Assembly (NCBI GenBank): GCA_024704765.1
Contig: JAKMXF010000066.1
Span: 1,113,883 to 1,177,882, forward strand
DNA from: Oopsacas minuta
Taxonomy: Eukaryota; Animalia; Porifera
DNA: 64,000 nucleotides
Direction of reading: 5' to 3'
In this document: positions 5,580-14,369 of the stretch, piece after piece
How positions within the stretch are numbered: the stretch's first letter is position 1
How the letters are laid out: each line of letters starts with the position of its first letter
The notes under the pieces: generated by a model
Told to the model about the DNA's origin: nothing
The model's database searches: none
Seen by the model: only the letters and a program-made list of their open reading frames with translations
Position numbers and translations under genes: made by a program

Positions 5580-8500
5580 ATGAAATCTGCGAAAGGCCTT
5601 TGCGATACGTGTTCTGAATCAACTCGTCCTGCTCTGGTAGCAGCAAGAGATGGTCACTTGAACTGCCTTGTATTTGCGTGCGATTCCCTTGGTCTAGCCA
5701 ATGAGCTTGATGGATACAGTGCAACACCATTACATTTTTCAGCACGACATGGTCATCTTGATTGCGTAGAATGGATAGTTCGTCATAATGTGATATCTCC
5801 TACGTCTGTTACACGTGGTGGTACAACCCCAGCACATGATGCAGCTGCAACAGGTCAGATAGATTGTCTCAAGTTTTTACTTTCAAATTCAAAGTGTTCA
5901 TTGAACGATCGTACTATCGAAGGTTCTACAATGCTACACATGGCCTGTCGTTTTGGCAGGCTCCCAATGGTGAAATGGCTGGTGGGTGAAAACGGAGTAT
6001 CACCCAATGAAACCGGCGTAAATGACGTCACCCCTATACATATTTCCGCGGCTAAAGACCATTTGAAATGCCTACAATGGTTAACACAGCAACCACAATA
6101 CATAGCTAATATGGAGACAATACACGGAGCTACTCCTACGTATTTCGCAGCGCAAGAGGGATGCTTCAAGAGCCTGGAATGGTTGATAGAACACGCGAAA
6201 GGTGACTCTAAAATAGCCGCAAAAGATGGTATGTTGCCTATACATGCTGCGGCACAGGCTGGACACCTAGACTGCATCAAATTGCTGATCTCCAGGGGTT
6301 ATGGGACTGTGAATGAATTGTCTAAAGATGGTGGAACGCCGATACACTTCGCGTCTGCAGGTGGACATGCTAATACGCTTGTATGGCTTATTCGTAATGG
6401 TGGTATAGTAAATGTTAAAGATAATTGTCGTAGTACTCCATTACATGACGCTGCTGAACAAGGACAAGCTACTACTGTTCGTGTGCTATTAGAATCTGGA
6501 AGTGATCCACGAGCAATGGACGATGAATGTTTTTCCCCTCTCGATTTAGCGGAGGAATCTGGCTCTGCTGAGTGCATCCATTTATTGAGGGTCGCGGCAT
6601 CCGGTCAGACTGTACCTCCCAATTTACAGTCACCTCAAAACAAACAAAATGGAAAGGTAAGTACAGGCAGTAGGTATTTAGACCGCGGAGGTTATGCACA
6701 GAGGGATTTTGATTATTTATCTTCTCCCACTGAGGTTGAGATCCAGACACCGAAGCAGAGAAGGAAAGGTAGGTTCAGCTTCAACTTTCTCCGGGGAAAC
6801 TCTGTTTTCAGCAGACGTTCTGCTACATCTCTTGATCACGAGGAAATTTTGAGGCGAAAAAGCAAAAAAGGCTACTACAGTAATCCAGATTCTGGTAATC
6901 AATCTCGAACAGATATATTCGCTAACGATAACCAAGCATCAAATCAACAATCTCCTTTGATGTTGAATGCGCTAATCAGCTCAAAATCTCCCGAAGTAAT
7001 ACGGGTAGTTCGTCATACTCAGCAGACCACCTCTCACAGCCCAAGTTATACTCCACCTCCTTCTCGAAAACGTTCTTTGACAGGCAATTTAGACAATTCT
7101 AATCCTCCCTCACCTGAACTATCAAAATCCACCGAATGGACAACTAGTAAGCCTAAGAAAAAACACATATTCAAGACACAGGAAGTGAACTCCGAATCTA
7201 GGGCAAAAGACAAAGCAAATTTTAAATCTTGGATGCAATACCAATCGAATATAAACAAACTCTCAACAAGCCCTAATCAAGATGTACATGTAGGTAAACA
7301 CAATAGAATATATGCAGTCAGGAATCCACTTATCGAAGCTGAGATTCAAAACGAGGAGAAACCAGAACGAAACATCATTGGAGTAGATGATACAGTTATT
7401 CTCAATAAGGTAAATTTCCTATCTGAAAATGACATTGAACATGTAGGTGCTAGAGAGTTTGGATTACCTGTTATTCCTCCTAAGCCTGTACTGTCAAAAG
7501 AGCAACTGATGCGCTTAGGCGATGATCCTTACAAAAAGGATGATGGCATCAGCTCGCCGTCTAAAGAGGATTACGGTGATTCTAACTATGCAAAACGTGA
7601 GCTCTCACTGGTAGATGAGAGAGATGAGATATCACGTATTTCAACATTTTCCGCCAAAAAATCAGTCCAATTAGTTGAGCCACAGGATCAGCCTGCAGCC
7701 GACCAAAAACGAGTGAACGCATCTTATCTTACAGGCATAAAGCAGAAACGCTTTGAAATGCTTGAAGCAGCTAGTCTAGCATTGCTAGGACCCCCGTTAA
7801 TCGGGCAAAGACGAGTGAATAAGTTTTTCATTGCAATCGGCAATGATCCTGGAATACACTGTTGGAAGGTTGGCCCTACCTCAAGCAAACTAACTGAAAT
7901 CACAGGAAACGGCCCTTTGTCTGGACATTTCCATGTATTAGATACTTATCTATTTCTGCATACTTCTGTCAATGGTCCAATATTCCATCAAATTCACGTT
8001 TGGAAAGGTCATTTATCTGATTGGGCAATTTATGACAAAGCCACAGAGTTAGCGCATGATCTCAGTAACTCTCTATCTGGCATCAGTCAGATTTATAAGG
8101 AAATTCAAGGCTTAGAAAGTGACCAGTTTATATCATATTTCAAATCTAGAGTTATCTACTATCACCAGTCAATCAATAAGCCATTCACTCAGGCCTGTTT
8201 GTACGAGTTATCGGGTACACATGCAATCAGATGCGCACAATCTAGCTTCGGCTTGAAGCAATTTACCACAACAATGATGTATATTCTCATTTCACAGAAA
8301 ACTATGTATCTTTGGGTTGGACCTCAAGCAACTGAGCATTTGAAAACAGCTGTTTATAATATTGCATTAGAGATAAGAGAAAAAGAACGAATGACGTCAT
8401 TTCTAGTGCTTGATCCTACGCAAAAGAATGAAGCGTTCAATTCAGCTCTTAGAATCGTGGAGCAAAAACCTTTAAAATCTTTCTCAAAAATATACCATTC

Positions 8501-11500
8501 AATCCATAACTCAAATATTCCCATAAAATACTACAGAACTATGTTTAATGAAGCTAAACGTATGGGCTATCGTGAGATTCGATATTCGCCAGTAATCTTC
8601 AACCGTGATGAACTAATATTCATCGTAATGTCTCTGAGATTGACTGTTTGGGTTGGTCATAATAAACGTCATCAAGCGCAGGATTTCCTCGGCATGGCAC
8701 AAGCACTGTTGAAAACTTGTTTCTATCCGGAATTACTTCATTGCGTTGTGCTACACGAATTCGGAGAAGATGCTCTATTTATCCATCAATTTCCTGAGCT
8801 TGAGAGACCTAATCTGAGCCTTTTAGATACTGAAACGAAAAATGAACTCAACATATTACCAATTCCAGTGCCTTTAATGCATGATGCGGGATTGGGTCGC
8901 ATCAAAATATTTGAGATTAATGCCAGTGGGAAGCGTGAACAGCCAATAGCAGAATTCGGGCATTTCAATTCATTGTACTGCTATTTTGTCCTGTATTCAT
9001 ATCGTAGGGAAATCAAGTTCCTATCTCTGATGTATGTGTGGATTGGTAATGAAGCTAATGATAATATTATCAGAAATCAAGAAATACAATTGAGAGAACT
9101 TCAAGCTAACACACCAGGTGATCAAGCGATCATATACATCCCTCAGAAGCTGGAAACCGATCACTTTTTGAGTCTTTTCAAAGCAAAGTTTATTGTGCAT
9201 CAAACATCGTTCAAAAGGTCATACGAAGATAATTCAGCATCTCTCTATAGGATATTTTCATTCAATCTGTTAAGCATCAAGGCAGTGCAAGTTGAAACGC
9301 AAGCGTCCTCTCTCTTGTCAAATTCCGCGTTTGTACTCAGTTCTCCGGCCAAGAGTATCGTATGGATTGGGCAGACTACGTCACAAAATGATCGTCGTGG
9401 TGCAATGCTAATTGCCAAAGAGCTGAAACCACAGGAACCTCTCACTTTGATGGAAGGTGAAGAAACGGAGAGATTTTGGGCACAACTTGGTGGGAAACAA
9501 ACCTACGCGCCTGTACCCAAAGAACATTGGCCACCACATCATGCCTCGCCAATACTCTATCATTTTTTTAAAGGCATAAAGCCTATATTCACTTCTATAC
9601 CTAATTTCACGCAGAAAGATTTGCATATTGGCAGCGTCTTTATTCTAGATACAAGTTCACATCTTTTCATATGGCATGGTAGTATGGTAGAGACGTTTGA
9701 CTCAAGAGCAATTGTGCAAGATTATCTGTTGCAAACAGCTCCAGAGAAGAGCTTAGACAAAATAGTGCTGGTTGTCCTTAATCAAGGTGCCGAGCCTTCT
9801 AGCTTCACAAGCCTATTCCCTGCATGGGATGATAACATTTGGAAAAATCCTGATAAACGATTGAGTCAGATTTTAGCAAGTAAGCCGATACTTAAACAGC
9901 CTCCTGCAGCCAATAATATCATTAGAGACGAGGCTAGATCTGCACTAAATATAGATGCCAGTATTCCTGCTGTGCACATTGAGCATGAGAAAAGCTTAGT
10001 TGAAAGATTACAGGAGAGACGAGGCAGTCCATCTGGCACACTACTAACTCCAGAGCCTTTCAAGATACAAGCTGACGCGGTTAAAGAAGATTTGATGAAA
10101 GAGATTAACGAACTGGATGAAGTTTTGAAAAGTTTTGAATTAGGAACAGCGATCAGTTTACCAAATACCGAATTTGAGCATGCGAATAAGAAAAAGATTA
10201 AATTAGACGCATTACGTAGAGGTGAGTTTTCAAAGTTCATGGGTAAACCTGAGCCTGTAGAAGAACTTGATACTGACGCTCTGATCAAAGAACTGGACAC
10301 AACGATGCAACAGGTGAATAGGAATGTATTAAACGAAGAGAAGCGAAGAAGCAGAACATACTCTAATCCTGAAGAGCTTATTCGTACAAGAGTAAACACA
10401 GATGTATCGTCCATGACTCCTTACACATTTTTACCCAACTTAAAGGAGCCTAGCACAACAGAAATGCTTGATAATTACGAAAGGAGACCAAGAAACGAGT
10501 CCATTGTCAGTATGAGCGGATCAAGTACTGGAGTACCAACTCAGCTGTCTTTGGTTAACACACCACTTATGTTGAAGAAAACTTCTGGCGGAAAATCCCC
10601 GAATTTCGCTCAGCGTAAACCTTTTAGTGTACCTGTTCCGGCCTCAAAAAGCCAAGAAAAGTACGTTAATGTCAATAGCAGTCAGCCAACTGGGATTGGG
10701 GCTTGGACGCCAAGCGTTGTGACCCCAAAAGGTCATTTTAAGCCTCCTCCACTGAGCGAGAAGAATAACCCAGAAATCGCCAAACATTTTCGCTCAAATG
10801 TGCAAGCGAAAATCGCTAAAACAAAAGCTAAATCTCCTCGTAACGATGAATTCCCAAGCCCTGCCTTAGACAGTACCAAATTTCTAATGTCTTTAGAACT
10901 AGAAGCAACTGGACAGATTGTAGAATTCGCTCTGAAGAGAAACACGCTTGTACAGAATGTGATTTATAAAGTAGTTGAAAAGTGCCGCTGCAAATTGACA
11001 CCAACCCTCTCCTTATTTGAAGTTCATCCCAGCTTGAACTTGGAGAGGAAGCTAGAAGATCACGAAGTTGTATTGAATGTTATGCAGCAATGGCCTGAGA
11101 GTTCTGGATCAACTGGTGAGTGTAAGCTTCTTGTTAGGGACTATCTAGACAAATATGCGATAATGGGAGGTATACTGAGTATCGATGAGGTAGAGATTTC
11201 TATTCATGACCGATCCCTACCTCGACTTAGATCTGAAATATTCGTCAACAGAACGATTCCTAAAGACGAAAAAGACTGGAGCAAAGTGAATATTGAATTC
11301 AAAATAGACGGTATATATTTCTGGCAAGATGAAAGAACTTTAAGATGTATTTCAAGATTTTCTGGAAATCAACTATACACATTTATCACGCAAGAAACAG
11401 ATACTCCTGCTCCTTATGCATTTGCATTGAAACCGTTAAATTCATGGAGCAGGGAGGAACTACACATTTTCTGCACACCAAATAATGAAATATTCTCTAC

Positions 11501-11624
11501 ATGGTATGGATATATTACAATTGGTATTTTCGGGTTAAAACCTTTATACAAAGACTGGCAAATAATGAGGAAACAATTTTCACAGCTTTTAGATATGAAG
11601 ACAAGATCTGACGAGACCCCCTAA
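5580..11624 (+). CDS. 2014-aa single-exon protein: espin-like ankyrin repeats + six gelsolin/villin repeats + MRL/Grb7-type RA and PH domains
   Basis: Ankyrin run collinear with espin (TPAHDAAATG, GATPTYFAAQEG, DGMLPIHAAAQAG, TPLHDAAEQG). Gelsolin repeats about 7840-9850 (PGIHCWKV, EIQGLESDQFISYFK, GHFNSLYCYFVLYSY, QGAEPSSFTSLFPAWD). RA motif LFEVHPSLNLERKLEDHEVVLNVMQQW followed by a PH-like region (DGIYFW, YAFALKP). Confidence 0.9.
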   Translation: MKSAKGLCDTCSESTRPALVAARDGHLNCLVFACDSLGLANELDGYSATPLHFSARHGHLDCVEWIVRHNVISPTSVTRGGTTPAHDAAATGQIDCLKFLLSNSKCSLNDRTIEGSTMLHMACRFGRLPMVKWLVGENGVSPNETGVNDVTPIHISAAKDHLKCLQWLTQQPQYIANMETIHGATPTYFAAQEGCFKSLEWLIEHAKGDSKIAAKDGMLPIHAAAQAGHLDCIKLLISRGYGTVNELSKDGGTPIHFASAGGHANTLVWLIRNGGIVNVKDNCRSTPLHDAAEQGQATTVRVLLESGSDPRAMDDECFSPLDLAEESGSAECIHLLRVAASGQTVPPNLQSPQNKQNGKVSTGSRYLDRGGYAQRDFDYLSSPTEVEIQTPKQRRKGRFSFNFLRGNSVFSRRSATSLDHEEILRRKSKKGYYSNPDSGNQSRTDIFANDNQASNQQSPLMLNALISSKSPEVIRVVRHTQQTTSHSPSYTPPPSRKRSLTGNLDNSNPPSPELSKSTEWTTSKPKKKHIFKTQEVNSESRAKDKANFKSWMQYQSNINKLSTSPNQDVHVGKHNRIYAVRNPLIEAEIQNEEKPERNIIGVDDTVILNKVNFLSENDIEHVGAREFGLPVIPPKPVLSKEQLMRLGDDPYKKDDGISSPSKEDYGDSNYAKRELSLVDERDEISRISTFSAKKSVQLVEPQDQPAADQKRVNASYLTGIKQKRFEMLEAASLALLGPPLIGQRRVNKFFIAIGNDPGIHCWKVGPTSSKLTEITGNGPLSGHFHVLDTYLFLHTSVNGPIFHQIHVWKGHLSDWAIYDKATELAHDLSNSLSGISQIYKEIQGLESDQFISYFKSRVIYYHQSINKPFTQACLYELSGTHAIRCAQSSFGLKQFTTTMMYILISQKTMYLWVGPQATEHLKTAVYNIALEIREKERMTSFLVLDPTQKNEAFNSALRIVEQKPLKSFSKIYHSIHNSNIPIKYYRTMFNEAKRMGYREIRYSPVIFNRDELIFIVMSLRLTVWVGHNKRHQAQDFLGMAQALLKTCFYPELLHCVVLHEFGEDALFIHQFPELERPNLSLLDTETKNELNILPIPVPLMHDAGLGRIKIFEINASGKREQPIAEFGHFNSLYCYFVLYSYRREIKFLSLMYVWIGNEANDNIIRNQEIQLRELQANTPGDQAIIYIPQKLETDHFLSLFKAKFIVHQTSFKRSYEDNSASLYRIFSFNLLSIKAVQVETQASSLLSNSAFVLSSPAKSIVWIGQTTSQNDRRGAMLIAKELKPQEPLTLMEGEETERFWAQLGGKQTYAPVPKEHWPPHHASPILYHFFKGIKPIFTSIPNFTQKDLHIGSVFILDTSSHLFIWHGSMVETFDSRAIVQDYLLQTAPEKSLDKIVLVVLNQGAEPSSFTSLFPAWDDNIWKNPDKRLSQILASKPILKQPPAANNIIRDEARSALNIDASIPAVHIEHEKSLVERLQERRGSPSGTLLTPEPFKIQADAVKEDLMKEINELDEVLKSFELGTAISLPNTEFEHANKKKIKLDALRRGEFSKFMGKPEPVEELDTDALIKELDTTMQQVNRNVLNEEKRRSRTYSNPEELIRTRVNTDVSSMTPYTFLPNLKEPSTTEMLDNYERRPRNESIVSMSGSSTGVPTQLSLVNTPLMLKKTSGGKSPNFAQRKPFSVPVPASKSQEKYVNVNSSQPTGIGAWTPSVVTPKGHFKPPPLSEKNNPEIAKHFRSNVQAKIAKTKAKSPRNDEFPSPALDSTKFLMSLELEATGQIVEFALKRNTLVQNVIYKVVEKCRCKLTPTLSLFEVHPSLNLERKLEDHEVVLNVMQQWPESSGSTGECKLLVRDYLDKYAIMGGILSIDEVEISIHDRSLPRLRSEIFVNRTIPKDEKDWSKVNIEFKIDGIYFWQDERTLRCISRFSGNQLYTFITQETDTPAPYAFALKPLNSWSREELHIFCTPNNEIFSTWYGYITIGIFGLKPLYKDWQIMRKQFSQLLDMKTRSDETP

Positions 11625-11633
11625 TAGTTACTG

Positions 11634-11671
11634 ATTATTATTATCATTATTATTATTATTATTATTATTAT
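11634..11671. repeat. (ATT)n microsatellite
   Basis: Direct reading; lies just after the stop codon at 11624. Confidence 0.9.
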
Positions 11672-12082
11672 TTTCATTGAATTGAATTTTCACCTTTATA
11701 CATTCAATATTTGTAATTTTTCATATTTGCCTTTCTATGTAATACAATTTTTGTATTAAAATATATTTATCGAATGTTATTTCAGTGCAGTAACCTAGTG
11801 GGAGAACAATTGACTGTTTACATCTGCTAATTTCCCACACTTTCCAGGTGAAAACGACATGTGTTTGTTCAAACTTGCAAATTACAAGTACAACTAAAAC
11901 ATGAATATCTGTATATTGCTTAATCCAGATAGTCTTAAGTAGCCATGATTCTATAAAAAATGTGGTAATTGTTATGAAACCCAGTGTTAAAATACGTCAA
12001 TTATTATCATATTGGAAAGAGATTACACTCTTGAATTATTTTTAAAATGGGTATTGGATTGATTAGAGATTTCACCGCAAAA

Positions 12083-12417
12083 ATGGAGACGATTGAGACT
12101 GACCGACAAACTAAAAAGAAGTCTAAAAGACCTTTAACAAGAGAATAATTGTCGAGTTCAATGAAACAGCTAGAAGTAAATTTATAAACGGATTCCAAGG
12201 TTGCAAGAAAAAACGAAAGAAAATCGCCTTGAAACAAAAAATAGCCAAAGAGAAAGCATTGAGACGTAAATTCAAATCCCAAAAGAGAAAAGAATTACTG
12301 GAAAAATTAGAAATATTAAAAGATCCCGAAGATACCCAAAAACAACCCACCGTTAGAACATTGAAAGTCTCTGATAATGTAATTAATATATCTGAAATTA
12401 ACCTTACATCAATGTAA
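12083..12417 (+). pseudogene. NOL12/Rrp17-like sequence with a frameshift near the 5' end
   Basis: The -1 frame from about 12127 reads RIIVEFNETARSKFINGFQGCKKKRKKIALKQKIAKEK, resembling the NOL12 motif (V.FDE..R.E.LTGF.KRK..RRK.A). The ATG frame (12083) stops at 12146-12148, and the NOL12 frame is closed upstream by TAA 12124-12126. Confidence 0.5.
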
Positions 12418-13385
12418 TGGCTAGTAATGATAATGAACATCTACCCAATGATGAAATATGATTATTTGTGTAGAAAGAAATCTGACCTGAATGACATAAA
12501 ACATCCATATACAATTTCTACCTGATTAGAAATTATGGTAGACAATGGGAATAGCACAAAATATAGAGAAATTGTTTACTTTTCCCAAAACAACCCCACA
12601 ACATTTATCATGCCCAGACATCGCAAGTTTGATCTTACAAAACAAGATAGCTTTCAACATATTAACGTGAAGGAAGCATATGTGTAAATATTCAATTTGC
12701 TTTGAACCTTTTTACCGAAATGAATACCCTTGCCATTTTACGGAATGTTATCGTGATTATGCTTGTAAATATTAAGCACCCACCCTCATTATGCTTACAC
12801 AATAATCGTTTTCAGTAATTAACAAATAATTGTTCTGAGTAAGAACAGCACTTGATTATATGCTAAGCGTTCCACGCAGTTTTCTTCGGGGATCATTTTA
12901 TAATATATATATATATATTTCTTCGGAATATGGAACAATCATTAATTAGCAGCCCAAATATATGGACAAGTTCTGAAGAGATTGCGATAGTTTCCAATTT
13001 AGAACTTTTATCACTCTATCGTTATAGTAGCTATAACGATACGGTGGTAAAAGTTTTTGTGTATATTATAACCTGCTTAATGCGATGTCTCTAACGAACA
13101 TGTATAATACTTGCAATGAACTGTTAACCTGCTCATTTATATACACAGATGATTAGTGAATTGTCATTACCCATAGATGTACAGATATCGTTCTTTCAAT
13201 TTCTACTACCCATTTTATTACAGTAGTATGATTATTCCTTTGTGAATTTATATTTCTACTCTAAACCAGGTGGATATATAGATCATCTCCGCTACATATG
13301 CCCAGGGCGGCTCTTGTAATTTCATGTAGGAACAAAGCAATTATCCATTCATATAATTTAATCATTGTTCTCATTAGTGCTCACA

Positions 13386-14369
13386 ATGAAGTGCTTAAGG
13401 CCATTAGCTCGTAGACTGACACTCAATACAGGAGCTGCTATACCAACACTAGGCCTAGGTACCTGGCAGTCTGAACCACAAGTAATAGGACCTGTGATAA
13501 GACATGCTATTGAGGAAGGTTATAGACATTTTGATTGTGCAGCTATGTACAAGAATGAAGCTGAAATAGGCCGAGCTTATAAAAGTATTATCAATGACGG
13601 TTTGTGTAGGCGAGAGGATTTATTTATTACTTCTAAATTAAGTCCTTATGACCTATTCCCTGATAAAATCAATGATGCAGTCAACAAGACATTGAGTGAC
13701 TTGAAATTAGATTATTTGGATCTTTATCTTATACACTGGCCTCATCGTATTAAATATCCTCCACTAAATACTACTGATACGTCACATGTAGAACCTTATA
13801 AAGAAAATTGGATGAAAGATGCTTGGATAATTCTAGAAAATATTTTCAAAGAAGGAAGGCTCAAAGCAATTGGATTATCAAATTTCTCCATAAAAAAGAT
13901 GGAACATATTTTATCAAATAGTACAGTTAAGCCAGCAGTCAACCAGGTCGAGAATCATATTTATTTTCAACAAGCAGTTATGAAAAAATACTTAGACTCT
14001 AAAGAAATTTTAATGCAATCGTATAGTCCGCTCGGCTCTCCTCAGAGAAGTTCGACTGCAGCAGAGGATCCAACTGTCTTGTCAGACCCAGTTGTGAAGA
14101 GAATTGCTGATACACACAATGCTACACCGGCACAGATATGTATCGCTTTTCTATTGAGAGACAATAAAGTTGTCTTAGCTAAGAGTGTAAATCCAATTCG
14201 TCTCAAATCTAACTTAAATTCTTTGGATATTCAACTGACAGAGCAAGATTATAAAGATATTACAGCAGTTGACAAAAACTATAGACTATTCCGAGCCAGA
14301 TTTCTGAGGCCTTATTCTACTTACAAGAATTTTTGGGACGAAGATTTCGAAGCAGAATTATCGAATTAA
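13386..14369 (+). CDS. Aldo-keto reductase, AKR1A1-like, intronless
   Basis: LGLGTW, GYRHFDCAAMYKNE, REDLFITSKL, LDYLDLYLIHWP, KAIGLSNFS, PAVNQVENH; catalytic D/Y/K/H present. First ATG is at 13386. Confidence 0.95.
   Translation: MKCLRPLARRLTLNTGAAIPTLGLGTWQSEPQVIGPVIRHAIEEGYRHFDCAAMYKNEAEIGRAYKSIINDGLCRREDLFITSKLSPYDLFPDKINDAVNKTLSDLKLDYLDLYLIHWPHRIKYPPLNTTDTSHVEPYKENWMKDAWIILENIFKEGRLKAIGLSNFSIKKMEHILSNSTVKPAVNQVENHIYFQQAVMKKYLDSKEILMQSYSPLGSPQRSSTAAEDPTVLSDPVVKRIADTHNATPAQICIAFLLRDNKVVLAKSVNPIRLKSNLNSLDIQLTEQDYKDITAVDKNYRLFRARFLRPYSTYKNFWDEDFEAELSN

What the first reader, a model, noticed from the sequence alone, without database searches (positions are those of the whole stretch)
5580..11624. 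Three-way fusion of actin regulators: espin ankyrins + villin/gelsolin core + MRL (RA-PH) module in one exon
Seen: one uninterrupted 2014-codon ORF, so the fusion cannot be a splicing-model artefact. It carries ankyrin repeats collinear with espin/forked (aa ~1-340), six gelsolin repeats (nt ~7840-9850) without a villin headpiece, and a C-terminal RA+PH pair of the RIAM/lamellipodin/Grb7 type. Known: espin and villin build microvillar actin bundles, and MRL proteins couple Rap1/Ras and phosphoinositides to actin and integrins. I know of no described protein combining them. Inference: a small-GTPase- and lipid-gated actin severing/capping or bundling protein, perhaps for collar microvilli or syncytial cytoskeleton.
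Basis: partly seen in the sequence, partly recalled or inferred. Interest (0 to 1): 0.88.

Follow-up and report, generated by a model that had tools for sequence, protein, structure and literature searches.

The report
Glass-sponge ankyrin–gelsolin–RA-PH fusion protein
A real, conserved 2014-residue glass-sponge protein joins an espin-type ankyrin domain, a six-repeat gelsolin core and a RIAM-type RA-PH unit. It arose when a gelsolin core joined an older sponge ankyrin+RA-PH protein, and it is a moderately interesting lineage-specific domain architecture rather than a new kind of system.

Summary
Window 5580-11624 (+) is one uninterrupted 2014-codon ORF of Oopsacas minuta. It holds a 10-repeat espin-type ankyrin domain, a complete G1-G6 gelsolin core without a villin headpiece, and a C-terminal RA-PH unit of the MRL/Grb7 type.

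Seven full-length orthologues (61-75% identical) exist as single ORFs in independent long-read assemblies. They share the same neighbouring genes and the same start and end, and dN is far below a saturated dS. Mis-join, splicing artefact and pseudogene are therefore excluded.

An exhaustive HMMER search of 1.84 billion representative proteins found no other protein with gelsolin plus RA-PH.

The fusion is not wholly new. Amphimedon queenslandica XP_019856099 carries the same espin-type ankyrin domain plus RA-PH but no gelsolin, and it is sister to the glass-sponge proteins (support 100/99). The simplest history is a sponge-specific espin paralogue that carried RA-PH and later gained a gelsolin core in the glass-sponge line.

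The functional inference is only partly supported. The Lys needed for RIAM to bind Rap1 is invariant. However, RIAM's phosphoinositide-binding residues are absent, and most conserved Ca2+-site acidic residues of the gelsolin core are replaced.

No RNA evidence was obtained. The earlier notes of the scan that I retrieved concern other loci of this genome.

The parts
5580..11624 (+). Complete coding sequence, 2014 codons plus stop; Oopsacas minuta gene annotated in GenBank as 'Espin-like' (1988-aa model)
   Evidence: The N- and C-termini coincide in eight orthologues.
5607..6614 (+). Espin-type ankyrin-repeat domain, 10 ANK repeats (aa 10-345)
   Evidence: Pfam. Collinear 219-bit match to Espin1-AR. 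AF2 block-mean pLDDT 95-98 over aa 11-340, with Foldseek top hits 5ET1/5ET0 at TM 0.90-0.92. The domain tree places it in the espin clade, support 98/98.
6657..6734 (+). 78-nt in-frame GT..AG stretch that the public model splices out (aa 361-386); probably coding
   Evidence: Conserved as protein in orthologues. dN 0.17 / dS 1.1 against P0002.
6615..7826 (+). Linker 1 (aa 346-749): predicted disordered over the part modelled (aa 350-490), with several short motifs invariant across orthologues (basic RRKGRF-type motif, RRxS-type sites, PxxPxK motif, pre-G1 helix)
   Evidence: Conservation profile and alignments. AF2 pLDDT <50 for aa 350-490, with no docking into the ankyrin groove. No Pfam family, including WH2, was reported for aa 361-740.
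7827..9854 (+). Six-repeat gelsolin-homology core G1-G6 (aa 750-1425) with no villin headpiece and degenerate Ca2+-site residues
   Evidence: PDB phmmer hit to gelsolin at E 4e-50, end to end. Pfam Gelsolin and DUF7904. Column analysis against 84 villin/gelsolin representatives.
9855..10889 (+). Linker 2 (aa 1426-1770), with two highly conserved predicted helices (aa ~1499-1522 and ~1560-1582) upstream of RA
   Evidence: Helices predicted at low confidence. No PDB match to RIAM talin-binding peptides at E<=10.
10890..11165 (+). Ras-association (RA) domain (aa ~1771-1862); K1801 aligns with RIAM K213
   Evidence: Pfam RA_2 at 3e-9 and RA at 1e-5. Match to the RIAM RA domain. The Lys is invariant, including in Amphimedon. 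K213A abolishes Rap1 binding in RIAM (PMC3471229).
11256..11573 (+). PH domain (aa ~1893-1998) of the integrated RA-PH unit; lacks the K-Xn-(K/R)-X-R phosphoinositide motif of RIAM
   Evidence: Profile match to the RIAM PH domain, i-Evalue 1.2e-4, and single-stretch RA+PH matches to lamellipodin and Grb14. Weak Pfam PH hit, E 0.049. Residue mapping.

Best explanation
SHOWN. This is a genuine, selectively maintained protein-coding gene found, in my searches, only in Oopsacas minuta and seven close relatives (presumably other glass sponges). Three folded modules are joined by long disordered linkers that carry motifs.

The N-terminal 10-repeat ankyrin domain belongs to a sponge-specific paralogue of espin. 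In the demosponge Amphimedon that paralogue already carries the C-terminal RA-PH unit. The glass-sponge version additionally has a full G1-G6 gelsolin core between the two.

INFERRED (mechanism). The RA-PH unit recruits the protein to membranes that carry an active Ras/Rap-type GTPase. The critical RA lysine is kept, but the canonical phosphoinositide pocket is not, so any lipid contribution would be non-canonical. The gelsolin core keeps its fold-defining residues but has lost most Ca2+-ligand acidic residues. It most likely binds actin in a Ca2+-independent way, by side-binding, capping or anchoring, rather than acting as a Ca2+-triggered severing switch. The espin-type ankyrin groove binds an extended peptide ligand, either a motor tail as in the Espin1-Myo3 complex or another partner.

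Together this would make a GTPase-addressed membrane-to-actin linker or scaffold.
For: The ORF and its domains are confirmed.

Seven orthologues are single ORFs in independent long-read assemblies, with the same downstream neighbours (Nop25, aldo-keto reductase) and identical ends. Contigs from three runs of one sample, and from a second organism or strain at ~96% identity, cover the whole ORF without indels or joints.

dN is 0.065 (ankyrin), 0.093 (gelsolin) and 0.17 (RA-PH), against saturated dS.

The exhaustive search found only the orthologue cluster matching across gelsolin plus RA-PH. Fifteen long gelsolin hits carry VHP, CH, PH, LRR or PDZ domains, never Ank or RA.

Amphimedon P0312 has Ank+RA+PH: BLAST 1e-104 and 5e-8, the RA-PH profile at 5.5e-14, Pfam RA at 1e-5, and no gelsolin anywhere in its 23.8-kb locus. 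In the ankyrin-domain tree, the fusion proteins plus Amphimedon have support 100/99, and the canonical espins form a separate clade that includes the O. minuta 590-aa paralogue.

K1801 is equivalent to RIAM K213 and is invariant. The Ca2+-site columns are replaced in all eight orthologues while the structural W/G/F columns are kept.
Against: No transcript evidence was obtained. The runs that hold the sequence appear to be DNA, and no RNA run was listed.

No binding activity of any module can be read from sequence. The actin-contact residues of G1, G2 and G4 were not assessed reliably.

The RA-PH model failed (pLDDT 34), so the integrated RA-PH packing is inferred from sequence profiles only.

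The taxonomic identity of the seven ENA orthologues is inferred from similarity and synteny, not from labels.

With only one demosponge orthologue, loss of gelsolin in Amphimedon cannot be distinguished from gain in glass sponges.
Confidence: 0.6

Rival explanations
1. One reading: a classical gelsolin/villin-type severing, capping or bundling enzyme. Its activity would be gated jointly by a small GTPase and by phosphoinositides, as in RIAM's coincidence detection, and by Ca2+ as in gelsolin.
For: The complete G1-G6 order is retained and many structural residues are kept. The RA-PH unit resembles RIAM and lamellipodin, whose RA-PH detects Rap1-GTP plus PI(4,5)P2 (PMC3471229). The RA lysine is conserved.
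Against: Fifteen of 27 family-conserved acidic columns are replaced in all orthologues. These include the positions that align with the gelsolin Ca2+ ligands in G1, G2 and G4. There is no headpiece for villin-type bundling. The equivalents of RIAM K327/K331/R333 are E/S/V.
Confidence: 0.15
2. The gelsolin core no longer handles actin at all. It would serve as a protein-protein interaction platform or a rigid spacer, as proposed for parts of supervillin and flightless-I. The protein would then be a Ras/Rap signalling scaffold, not an actin regulator.
For: G1-G3 are strongly divergent, at only ~39 bits to gelsolin G1-G2. Ca2+-site residues and several G1-G2 linker residues are lost. The long linkers are rich in conserved short motifs typical of scaffolds.
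Against: The core is the second most conserved part of the protein (70-83% identity, dN 0.09). Motifs typical of the actin-binding family are kept, including the QG.ES..F..YF block of G1 and the G4-G6 signature residues. None of this is a direct test.
Confidence: 0.2
3. Assembly mis-join, gene-model artefact or decaying pseudogene.
For: The public model differs from the ORF by a 78-nt predicted intron. No RNA evidence was obtained.
Against: Eight taxa keep the same intact ~2000-codon ORF with the same ends and neighbours. Independent contigs span every junction without indels. dN is far below dS in every segment.
Confidence: 0.02

Closest known systems
Amphimedon queenslandica XP_019856099 / UniRef A0A1X7U5G0 ('ankyrin-1-like'; 'Ras-associating domain-containing protein'), 952 aa
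   Same: It has the espin-type 10-ANK domain: 43% identity over 400 aa, the best-scoring hit of the ankyrin-domain search (which by its length filter could not list the 2000-aa orthologues), and sister in the tree at 100/99. It has a disordered linker, then an RA-PH unit that ends ~20 aa before the C-terminus. The RIAM-K213-equivalent Lys is conserved.
   Different: It has no gelsolin repeats in the protein or anywhere in its 23.8-kb locus. The gene has introns, and the linker is acidic and unrelated in sequence. It is uncharacterised and only automatically named.
Espin / espin-like (ESPN, ESPNL; Drosophila forked)
   Same: The N-terminal ankyrin-repeat domain has 10 repeats and is collinear, at 35-40% identity, with the same superhelix (TM 0.9 to Espin1-AR).
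   Different: No WH2 or espin-type tail was reported by Pfam for aa 361-740 and 1501-1740, and the rest of the protein is gelsolin plus RA-PH. It belongs to a separate sponge-specific paralogue clade. The canonical sponge espins (Ephydatia P0197, O. minuta P0207) group with the bilaterian espins.
Gelsolin superfamily six-repeat proteins (gelsolin, villin, adseverin; with N-terminal additions: flightless-I, supervillin)
   Same: It has G1-G6 in canonical order at 26-32% identity to many representatives, and the fold-defining residues are kept. Fusion of a gelsolin core to other modules is common: LRR, CH, PH and PDZ partners were seen.
   Different: It has no headpiece, most Ca2+-ligand acidic residues are replaced, and the flanking modules (espin-type ankyrin, RA-PH) were not seen with any other gelsolin core.
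MRL adaptors (MIG-10/RIAM/lamellipodin) and Grb7/10/14
   Same: It has a tandem RA-PH unit. RIAM and lamellipodin score above Grb14, Grb10 and Grb7. The nearest Atlas clusters are RAPH1-type. The key RA lysine is kept.
   Different: There is no C-terminal proline-rich Ena/VASP- or profilin-binding region, because the protein ends 16 aa after the PH domain. There is no SH2/BPS. RIAM's PH phosphoinositide motif is absent. The two conserved helices upstream of RA share only their layout with RIAM TBS1/TBS2, with no detectable sequence match.

Membership tests
Espin family | N-terminal 10-repeat ankyrin domain collinear with Espin1-AR | tested here: met
   Single-stretch 219-bit match to 5ET0/5ET1. 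AF2 model against 5ET1 gives TM 0.90, rmsd 2.2 A. Espin clade support 98/98.
Espin family | WH2 motif and C-terminal actin-bundling module | tested here: not met
   No Pfam family was reported for aa 361-740 or 1501-1740 at E<=1. The C-terminus is RA-PH. By contrast, the canonical sponge espin-like proteins show faint phostensin/VHP-like tails.
Espin family | Ankyrin groove binds a Myo3 ARB-type or internal auto-inhibitory peptide (basic residues, KxL, YY) | tested here: inconclusive
   AF2 of aa 1-490 did not dock the linker into the groove. No clear ARB-like motif was seen by eye in the linker alignments (motif definition from PMC4758956).
Gelsolin/villin superfamily | Six gelsolin-homology repeats in G1-G6 order | tested here: met
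   aa 750-1425 aligns to gelsolin 4-717 at E 4e-50.
Gelsolin/villin superfamily | Conserved acidic Ca2+-coordinating residues in the repeats | tested here: not met
   Fifteen of 27 family-conserved Asp/Glu columns are replaced in all eight orthologues. Examples are aa 816/817/829 in G1, 899/904/921 in G2, 1133/1162/1163 in G4, 1249 in G5 and 1352 in G6. Assigning these columns to Ca2+ sites rests on my knowledge of the gelsolin structures.
Villin subfamily | C-terminal villin headpiece | tested here: not met
   No VHP hit, and the headpiece columns are gaps.
Gelsolin/villin superfamily | Actin severing, capping or nucleating activity | not testable with these tools
   Requires biochemistry.
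MRL family (MIG-10/RIAM/lamellipodin) | Integrated RA-PH tandem | tested here: met
   The profile matches RIAM at 5e-13 (RA 2e-6, PH 1.2e-4) and lamellipodin in a single stretch at 6e-10. Packing of the two domains was not modelled, because AF2 failed.
MRL family (MIG-10/RIAM/lamellipodin) | Proline-rich region with Ena/VASP EVH1 and profilin sites C-terminal to PH | tested here: not met
   The protein ends 16 aa after the PH domain in O. minuta, and the end is conserved in the orthologues.
MRL family (MIG-10/RIAM/lamellipodin) | N-terminal talin-binding amphipathic helices | tested here: inconclusive
   Two invariant predicted helices lie upstream of RA. There was no sequence match to RIAM peptides in the PDB at E<=10.
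MRL family (MIG-10/RIAM/lamellipodin) | RA lysine required for Ras/Rap binding (RIAM K213) | tested here: met
   K1801 aligns with K213 and is invariant in the orthologues and in Amphimedon (PMC3471229).
MRL family (MIG-10/RIAM/lamellipodin) | PH beta1-beta2 K-Xn-(K/R)-X-R phosphoinositide motif (RIAM K327/K331/R333) | tested here: not met
   The aligned residues are E, S/T and V/A (motif from PMC3471229).
Grb7/10/14 family | BPS region and C-terminal SH2 after RA-PH | tested here: not met
   No SH2 or BPS in Pfam, and the protein ends after the PH domain.

The most novel reading that the evidence does not exclude
Glass sponges evolved a unique Ras/Rap-addressed, Ca2+-independent gelsolin-type actin regulator by inserting a villin-like core into a sponge-specific espin paralogue. 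In this reading, one polypeptide couples GTPase signalling at the membrane, actin-filament handling and an ankyrin-groove cargo such as a myosin tail. It would be specialised for the syncytial trabecular cytoskeleton or for the collar bodies of Hexactinellida.
Probability: 0.25. Interest if true: 0.6.

Novelty: new variant of a known kind. Interest (0 to 1): 0.45.

Why it matters
The gene gives a clean, datable example of stepwise domain accretion in early-branching animals. The steps are an espin duplication in sponges, then addition of RA-PH, then insertion of a whole six-repeat gelsolin core.

It is also a candidate molecule for the unusual syncytial cytoskeleton of glass sponges, about which almost nothing molecular is known.

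In addition, it is a natural experiment on what a gelsolin core does after losing its Ca2+ switch and being tethered to a GTPase-binding unit.

The value is evolutionary and cell-biological. It does not reveal a new mechanism class, and domain shuffling around gelsolin cores is common.

Tried and rejected
1. AlphaFold2 of aa 1495-2014 with the 8-sequence alignment failed (mean pLDDT 34.5), so no fold search of RA-PH was possible.

2. A word-indexed homologue search with the RA-PH/linker alignment returned nothing at E<=0.001. I read this as a sensitivity limit, not as absence.

3. I tested whether the two conserved helices in linker 2 are RIAM-like talin-binding sites. phmmer of aa 1495-1530 against the PDB gave only a chance-level srGAP2 hit and no RIAM peptide. 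The idea stays an untested lead.

4. I tested whether the post-ankyrin linker docks into the ankyrin groove as in espin auto-inhibition. AF2 left aa 350-490 disordered.

5. RNA evidence could not be obtained. The runs holding the locus are of unknown kind, with flat depth and Nextera adapters, so probably DNA. No run was listed with the library word 'RNA'. No public contig encodes exactly the 2014-aa product.

6. I checked for hidden gelsolin exons in the Amphimedon locus. tblastn found none.

7. Profiles of linker 1, linker 2 and the gelsolin core, searched against all fetched proteins, gave no hits outside the orthologues and the ordinary gelsolins.

8. The Atlas search with the full protein returned only generic ankyrin clusters.

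9. dN/dS ratios could not be computed for most segments because dS is saturated.


Full report
OBSERVATION

The window carries a single uninterrupted ORF at 5580-11624 on the + strand, 2014 codons long and starting with ATG. Pfam finds ankyrin families over aa ~20-340, Gelsolin plus DUF7904 in the middle, and RA_2/RA at aa 1778-1853 with a weak PH hit behind it.

Against PDB sequences, aa 750-1425 aligns end to end with plasma gelsolin residues 4-717, that is all six repeats (E 4e-50). The last 274 residues match the RA-PH crystal constructs of RIAM, Grb14 and lamellipodin.

A profile built from eight orthologues strengthens the RA-PH match. RIAM scores 5e-13, with RA (2e-6) and PH (1.2e-4) each significant. 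Lamellipodin scores 6e-10 in one stretch across both domains, and Grb14 scores 1e-9.

The ankyrin domain aligns with mouse Espin1-AR in one collinear stretch, aa 16-339 to 6-329, at 219 bits. The best single stretch to ankyrin-1 scores only 137 bits. An AlphaFold2 model shows ten ANK repeats with block-mean pLDDT of 95-98 over aa 11-340. Its best PDB matches are the two Espin1-AR structures (TM 0.90-0.92, rmsd 2.2 A, 37% identity), far ahead of the other ankyrin proteins.

There is no villin headpiece by Pfam. The headpiece columns are empty in an alignment with 84 villin/gelsolin representatives.

IS THE GENE REAL?

The organism is the glass sponge Oopsacas minuta. The locus is GCA_024704765.1 contig JAKMXF010000066.1, and the public protein is named 'Espin-like'.

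That public model is 1988 aa because it removes 78 in-frame bases (6657-6734, GTAAGT...AG) as an intron. All seven orthologues keep the corresponding stretch as conserved protein. Against P0002 it shows dN 0.17 and dS 1.1. It is therefore most likely coding, and in either case the architecture is unchanged.

Seven full-length orthologues (P0002-P0008; 61-75% identity, 1980-2053 aa) come from ENA long-read assemblies. Each was called as one uninterrupted ORF. For the two whose loci I fetched (P0002 and P0008), a G-patch gene lies upstream and Nop25 lies ~200 nt downstream.

In the window, Nop25 (12127-12411) and an aldo-keto reductase (13365-14369) follow in the same order. Start and stop positions coincide in all eight proteins.

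Contigs from three runs of one sample, and from a second organism or strain about 96% identical, cover every domain junction without indels or joints.

dN is 0.065 for the ankyrin domain, 0.093 for the gelsolin core and 0.17 for RA-PH, and 0.20-0.32 for the linkers, while dS is saturated. Mis-join, model artefact and pseudogene are excluded.

What is missing is direct RNA evidence. The runs that hold the locus look like DNA, no RNA run was listed, and no public contig encodes exactly the 2014-aa product.

HOW WIDESPREAD IS THE ARCHITECTURE?

I ran an exhaustive phmmer search with the C-terminal 1200 residues (G1 onward through RA-PH) against 1.84 billion representative proteins. It found one protein matching over the whole query, the orthologue cluster representative P0008. 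The other 149 listed hits match only the gelsolin part.

I scanned the fifteen long hits among them. They carry headpiece, CH, PH, LRR or PDZ partners, and never ankyrin or RA. In the full-length word search, only the orthologues combine ankyrin with gelsolin.

No paper in the searchable library pairs Oopsacas with gelsolin or describes this domain combination.

So the three-part protein appears confined to O. minuta and its close relatives. I take these to be hexactinellids on the basis of similarity and synteny, because the ENA records carry no organism label in these tools.

THE KEY REFINEMENT

Searching with the ankyrin domain alone returned mostly espin and espin-like proteins at 33-47% identity over more than 90% of the domain. 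The best hit, P0192/P0312, is Amphimedon queenslandica XP_019856099. UniRef lists it as a 'Ras-associating domain-containing protein'.

It matches the query at aa 2-400 (43% identity) and again at aa 1765-1987 (E 5e-8). The glass-sponge RA-PH profile hits it at 5.5e-14 over RA plus PH. Pfam finds RA (1e-5) and PH (0.007) at its C-terminus.

It has no gelsolin repeat, by Pfam, by the gelsolin profile, or by tblastn over its whole 23.8-kb locus.

In a maximum-likelihood tree of the ankyrin domains, the espin-type domains separate from the outgroup ankyrin proteins (98/98). The eight fusion proteins plus Amphimedon form a clade (100/99). This clade groups, with weaker support (89/82), with long espin-like proteins of Sycon and Oscarella.

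The canonical espins form a separate clade (90/92). It contains the bilaterian ESPN/ESPNL, Ephydatia Em0008g371a and a second, 590-aa O. minuta 'Espin-like' protein, P0207.

The simplest history has three steps. Sponges duplicated espin. One copy carried, or acquired, an RA-PH unit at least in the demosponge-hexactinellid ancestor. A complete gelsolin core was then inserted into its linker in the glass-sponge line. Loss of the core in Amphimedon cannot yet be excluded.

Unchecked notes from this scan place a separate villin gene, and espin-like actin-binding tails on other proteins, elsewhere in the same genome.

STATE OF EACH MODULE

RA domain. RIAM K213, whose mutation abolishes Rap1 binding and membrane recruitment (PMC3471229), aligns with K1801. 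This residue is invariant in all orthologues and in Amphimedon.

PH domain. RIAM's beta1-beta2 residues K327/K331/R333, which are required for PI(4,5)P2-dependent recruitment, align with E, S/T and V/A. The canonical phosphoinositide pocket is therefore not conserved.

Gelsolin core. I compared it with 84 villin/gelsolin representatives and looked at columns conserved in at least 70% of them. The structural W/G/F/L columns are mostly kept. However, 15 of the 27 conserved Asp/Glu columns are replaced by non-acidic or altered residues in all eight orthologues. Examples are aa 816, 817 and 829 in G1; 899, 904 and 921 in G2; 1133, 1162 and 1163 in G4; 1249 in G5; and 1352 in G6.

In the pairwise alignment with horse and human gelsolin, these are the positions of the acidic residues that I know as the type-1 and type-2 Ca2+ ligands. 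That assignment rests on my knowledge of the gelsolin structures. A Ca2+-triggered opening of the gelsolin kind is therefore unlikely.

Linkers. The modelled part of linker 1 (aa 350-490) is predicted disordered, but both linkers carry many invariant short motifs. Among them are basic RRxS-type sites, a PxxPxK motif and two strongly conserved helices about 200-280 residues upstream of RA.

The helix layout recalls RIAM's TBS1/TBS2 (PMC3605642). No sequence similarity to RIAM peptides was detectable, so I do not claim it.

MECHANISM

The following is shown: three folded modules, their family affinities, their conservation, and which hallmark residues are kept or lost.

The following is inferred. 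The RA-PH unit addresses the protein to membranes bearing an active Ras/Rap GTPase. The gelsolin core contacts actin without a Ca2+ switch. The espin-type groove binds an extended peptide ligand, as in the Espin1-Myo3 complexes (PMC4758956).

VERDICT

This is a real, conserved and apparently lineage-restricted domain architecture made of known modules. It is already present in public databases under an uninformative automatic name and is undescribed in the literature I could search. A simpler two-module relative exists in a demosponge.

It is a new variant of known kinds (espin paralogue, gelsolin superfamily, RA-PH adaptors). It is of moderate interest for cytoskeleton evolution and glass-sponge cell biology.

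Noticed in passing
window 6657-6734: The GenBank model splices out a 78-nt in-frame GT..AG stretch. Orthologues conserve it as protein, so the annotated intron is probably false or optional.
   Followed up: yes
window 12127-12411 (+) and 13365-14369 (+): A Nop25 homologue and an aldo-keto reductase lie downstream, in the same order as in the orthologous loci L001 and L002. No + strand ORF of 70 aa or more covers Nop25, so it may be split or start late.
   Followed up: partly
window 9866-10414 (-): A 182-aa antisense ORF lies inside the poorly conserved linker 2 of the gene. It is probably a chance ORF.
   Followed up: no
window 7467-7496 (aa 630-639): An invariant P.IPPKPVLS motif (PxxPxK, SH3 class II-like) lies in linker 1. 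Several RRxS-type basic sites are also conserved across the eight orthologues.
   Followed up: partly
window 10074-10145 and 10257-10325: Two near-invariant predicted amphipathic helices lie upstream of RA, arranged like RIAM TBS1/TBS2. No detectable sequence similarity to RIAM peptides was found.
   Followed up: partly
window 8768-10875: Runs X2 and X3, from the same sample as the assembly, carry alternative bases at several sites (4 synonymous and 5 non-synonymous among those listed), suggesting a second allele or haplotype. Run X5, from another organism or strain, differs at ~4% of sites, with 18 synonymous and 14 non-synonymous among the listed sites, most of them (27 of 32) in linker 2.
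   Followed up: partly
P0207 (O. minuta, 590 aa) and P0205/P0206: A second, short 'Espin-like' gene of O. minuta and its relatives groups with the canonical espins. It shows a faint phostensin-like tail and is probably the true espin orthologue.
   Followed up: partly
L003 (Amphimedon GL345481.1) 10001-13816: The Amphimedon Ank+RA-PH gene has introns and a highly acidic ~350-aa linker. Its neighbours (Kelch-kinase, Arfaptin) differ from those of the glass-sponge locus.
   Followed up: partly
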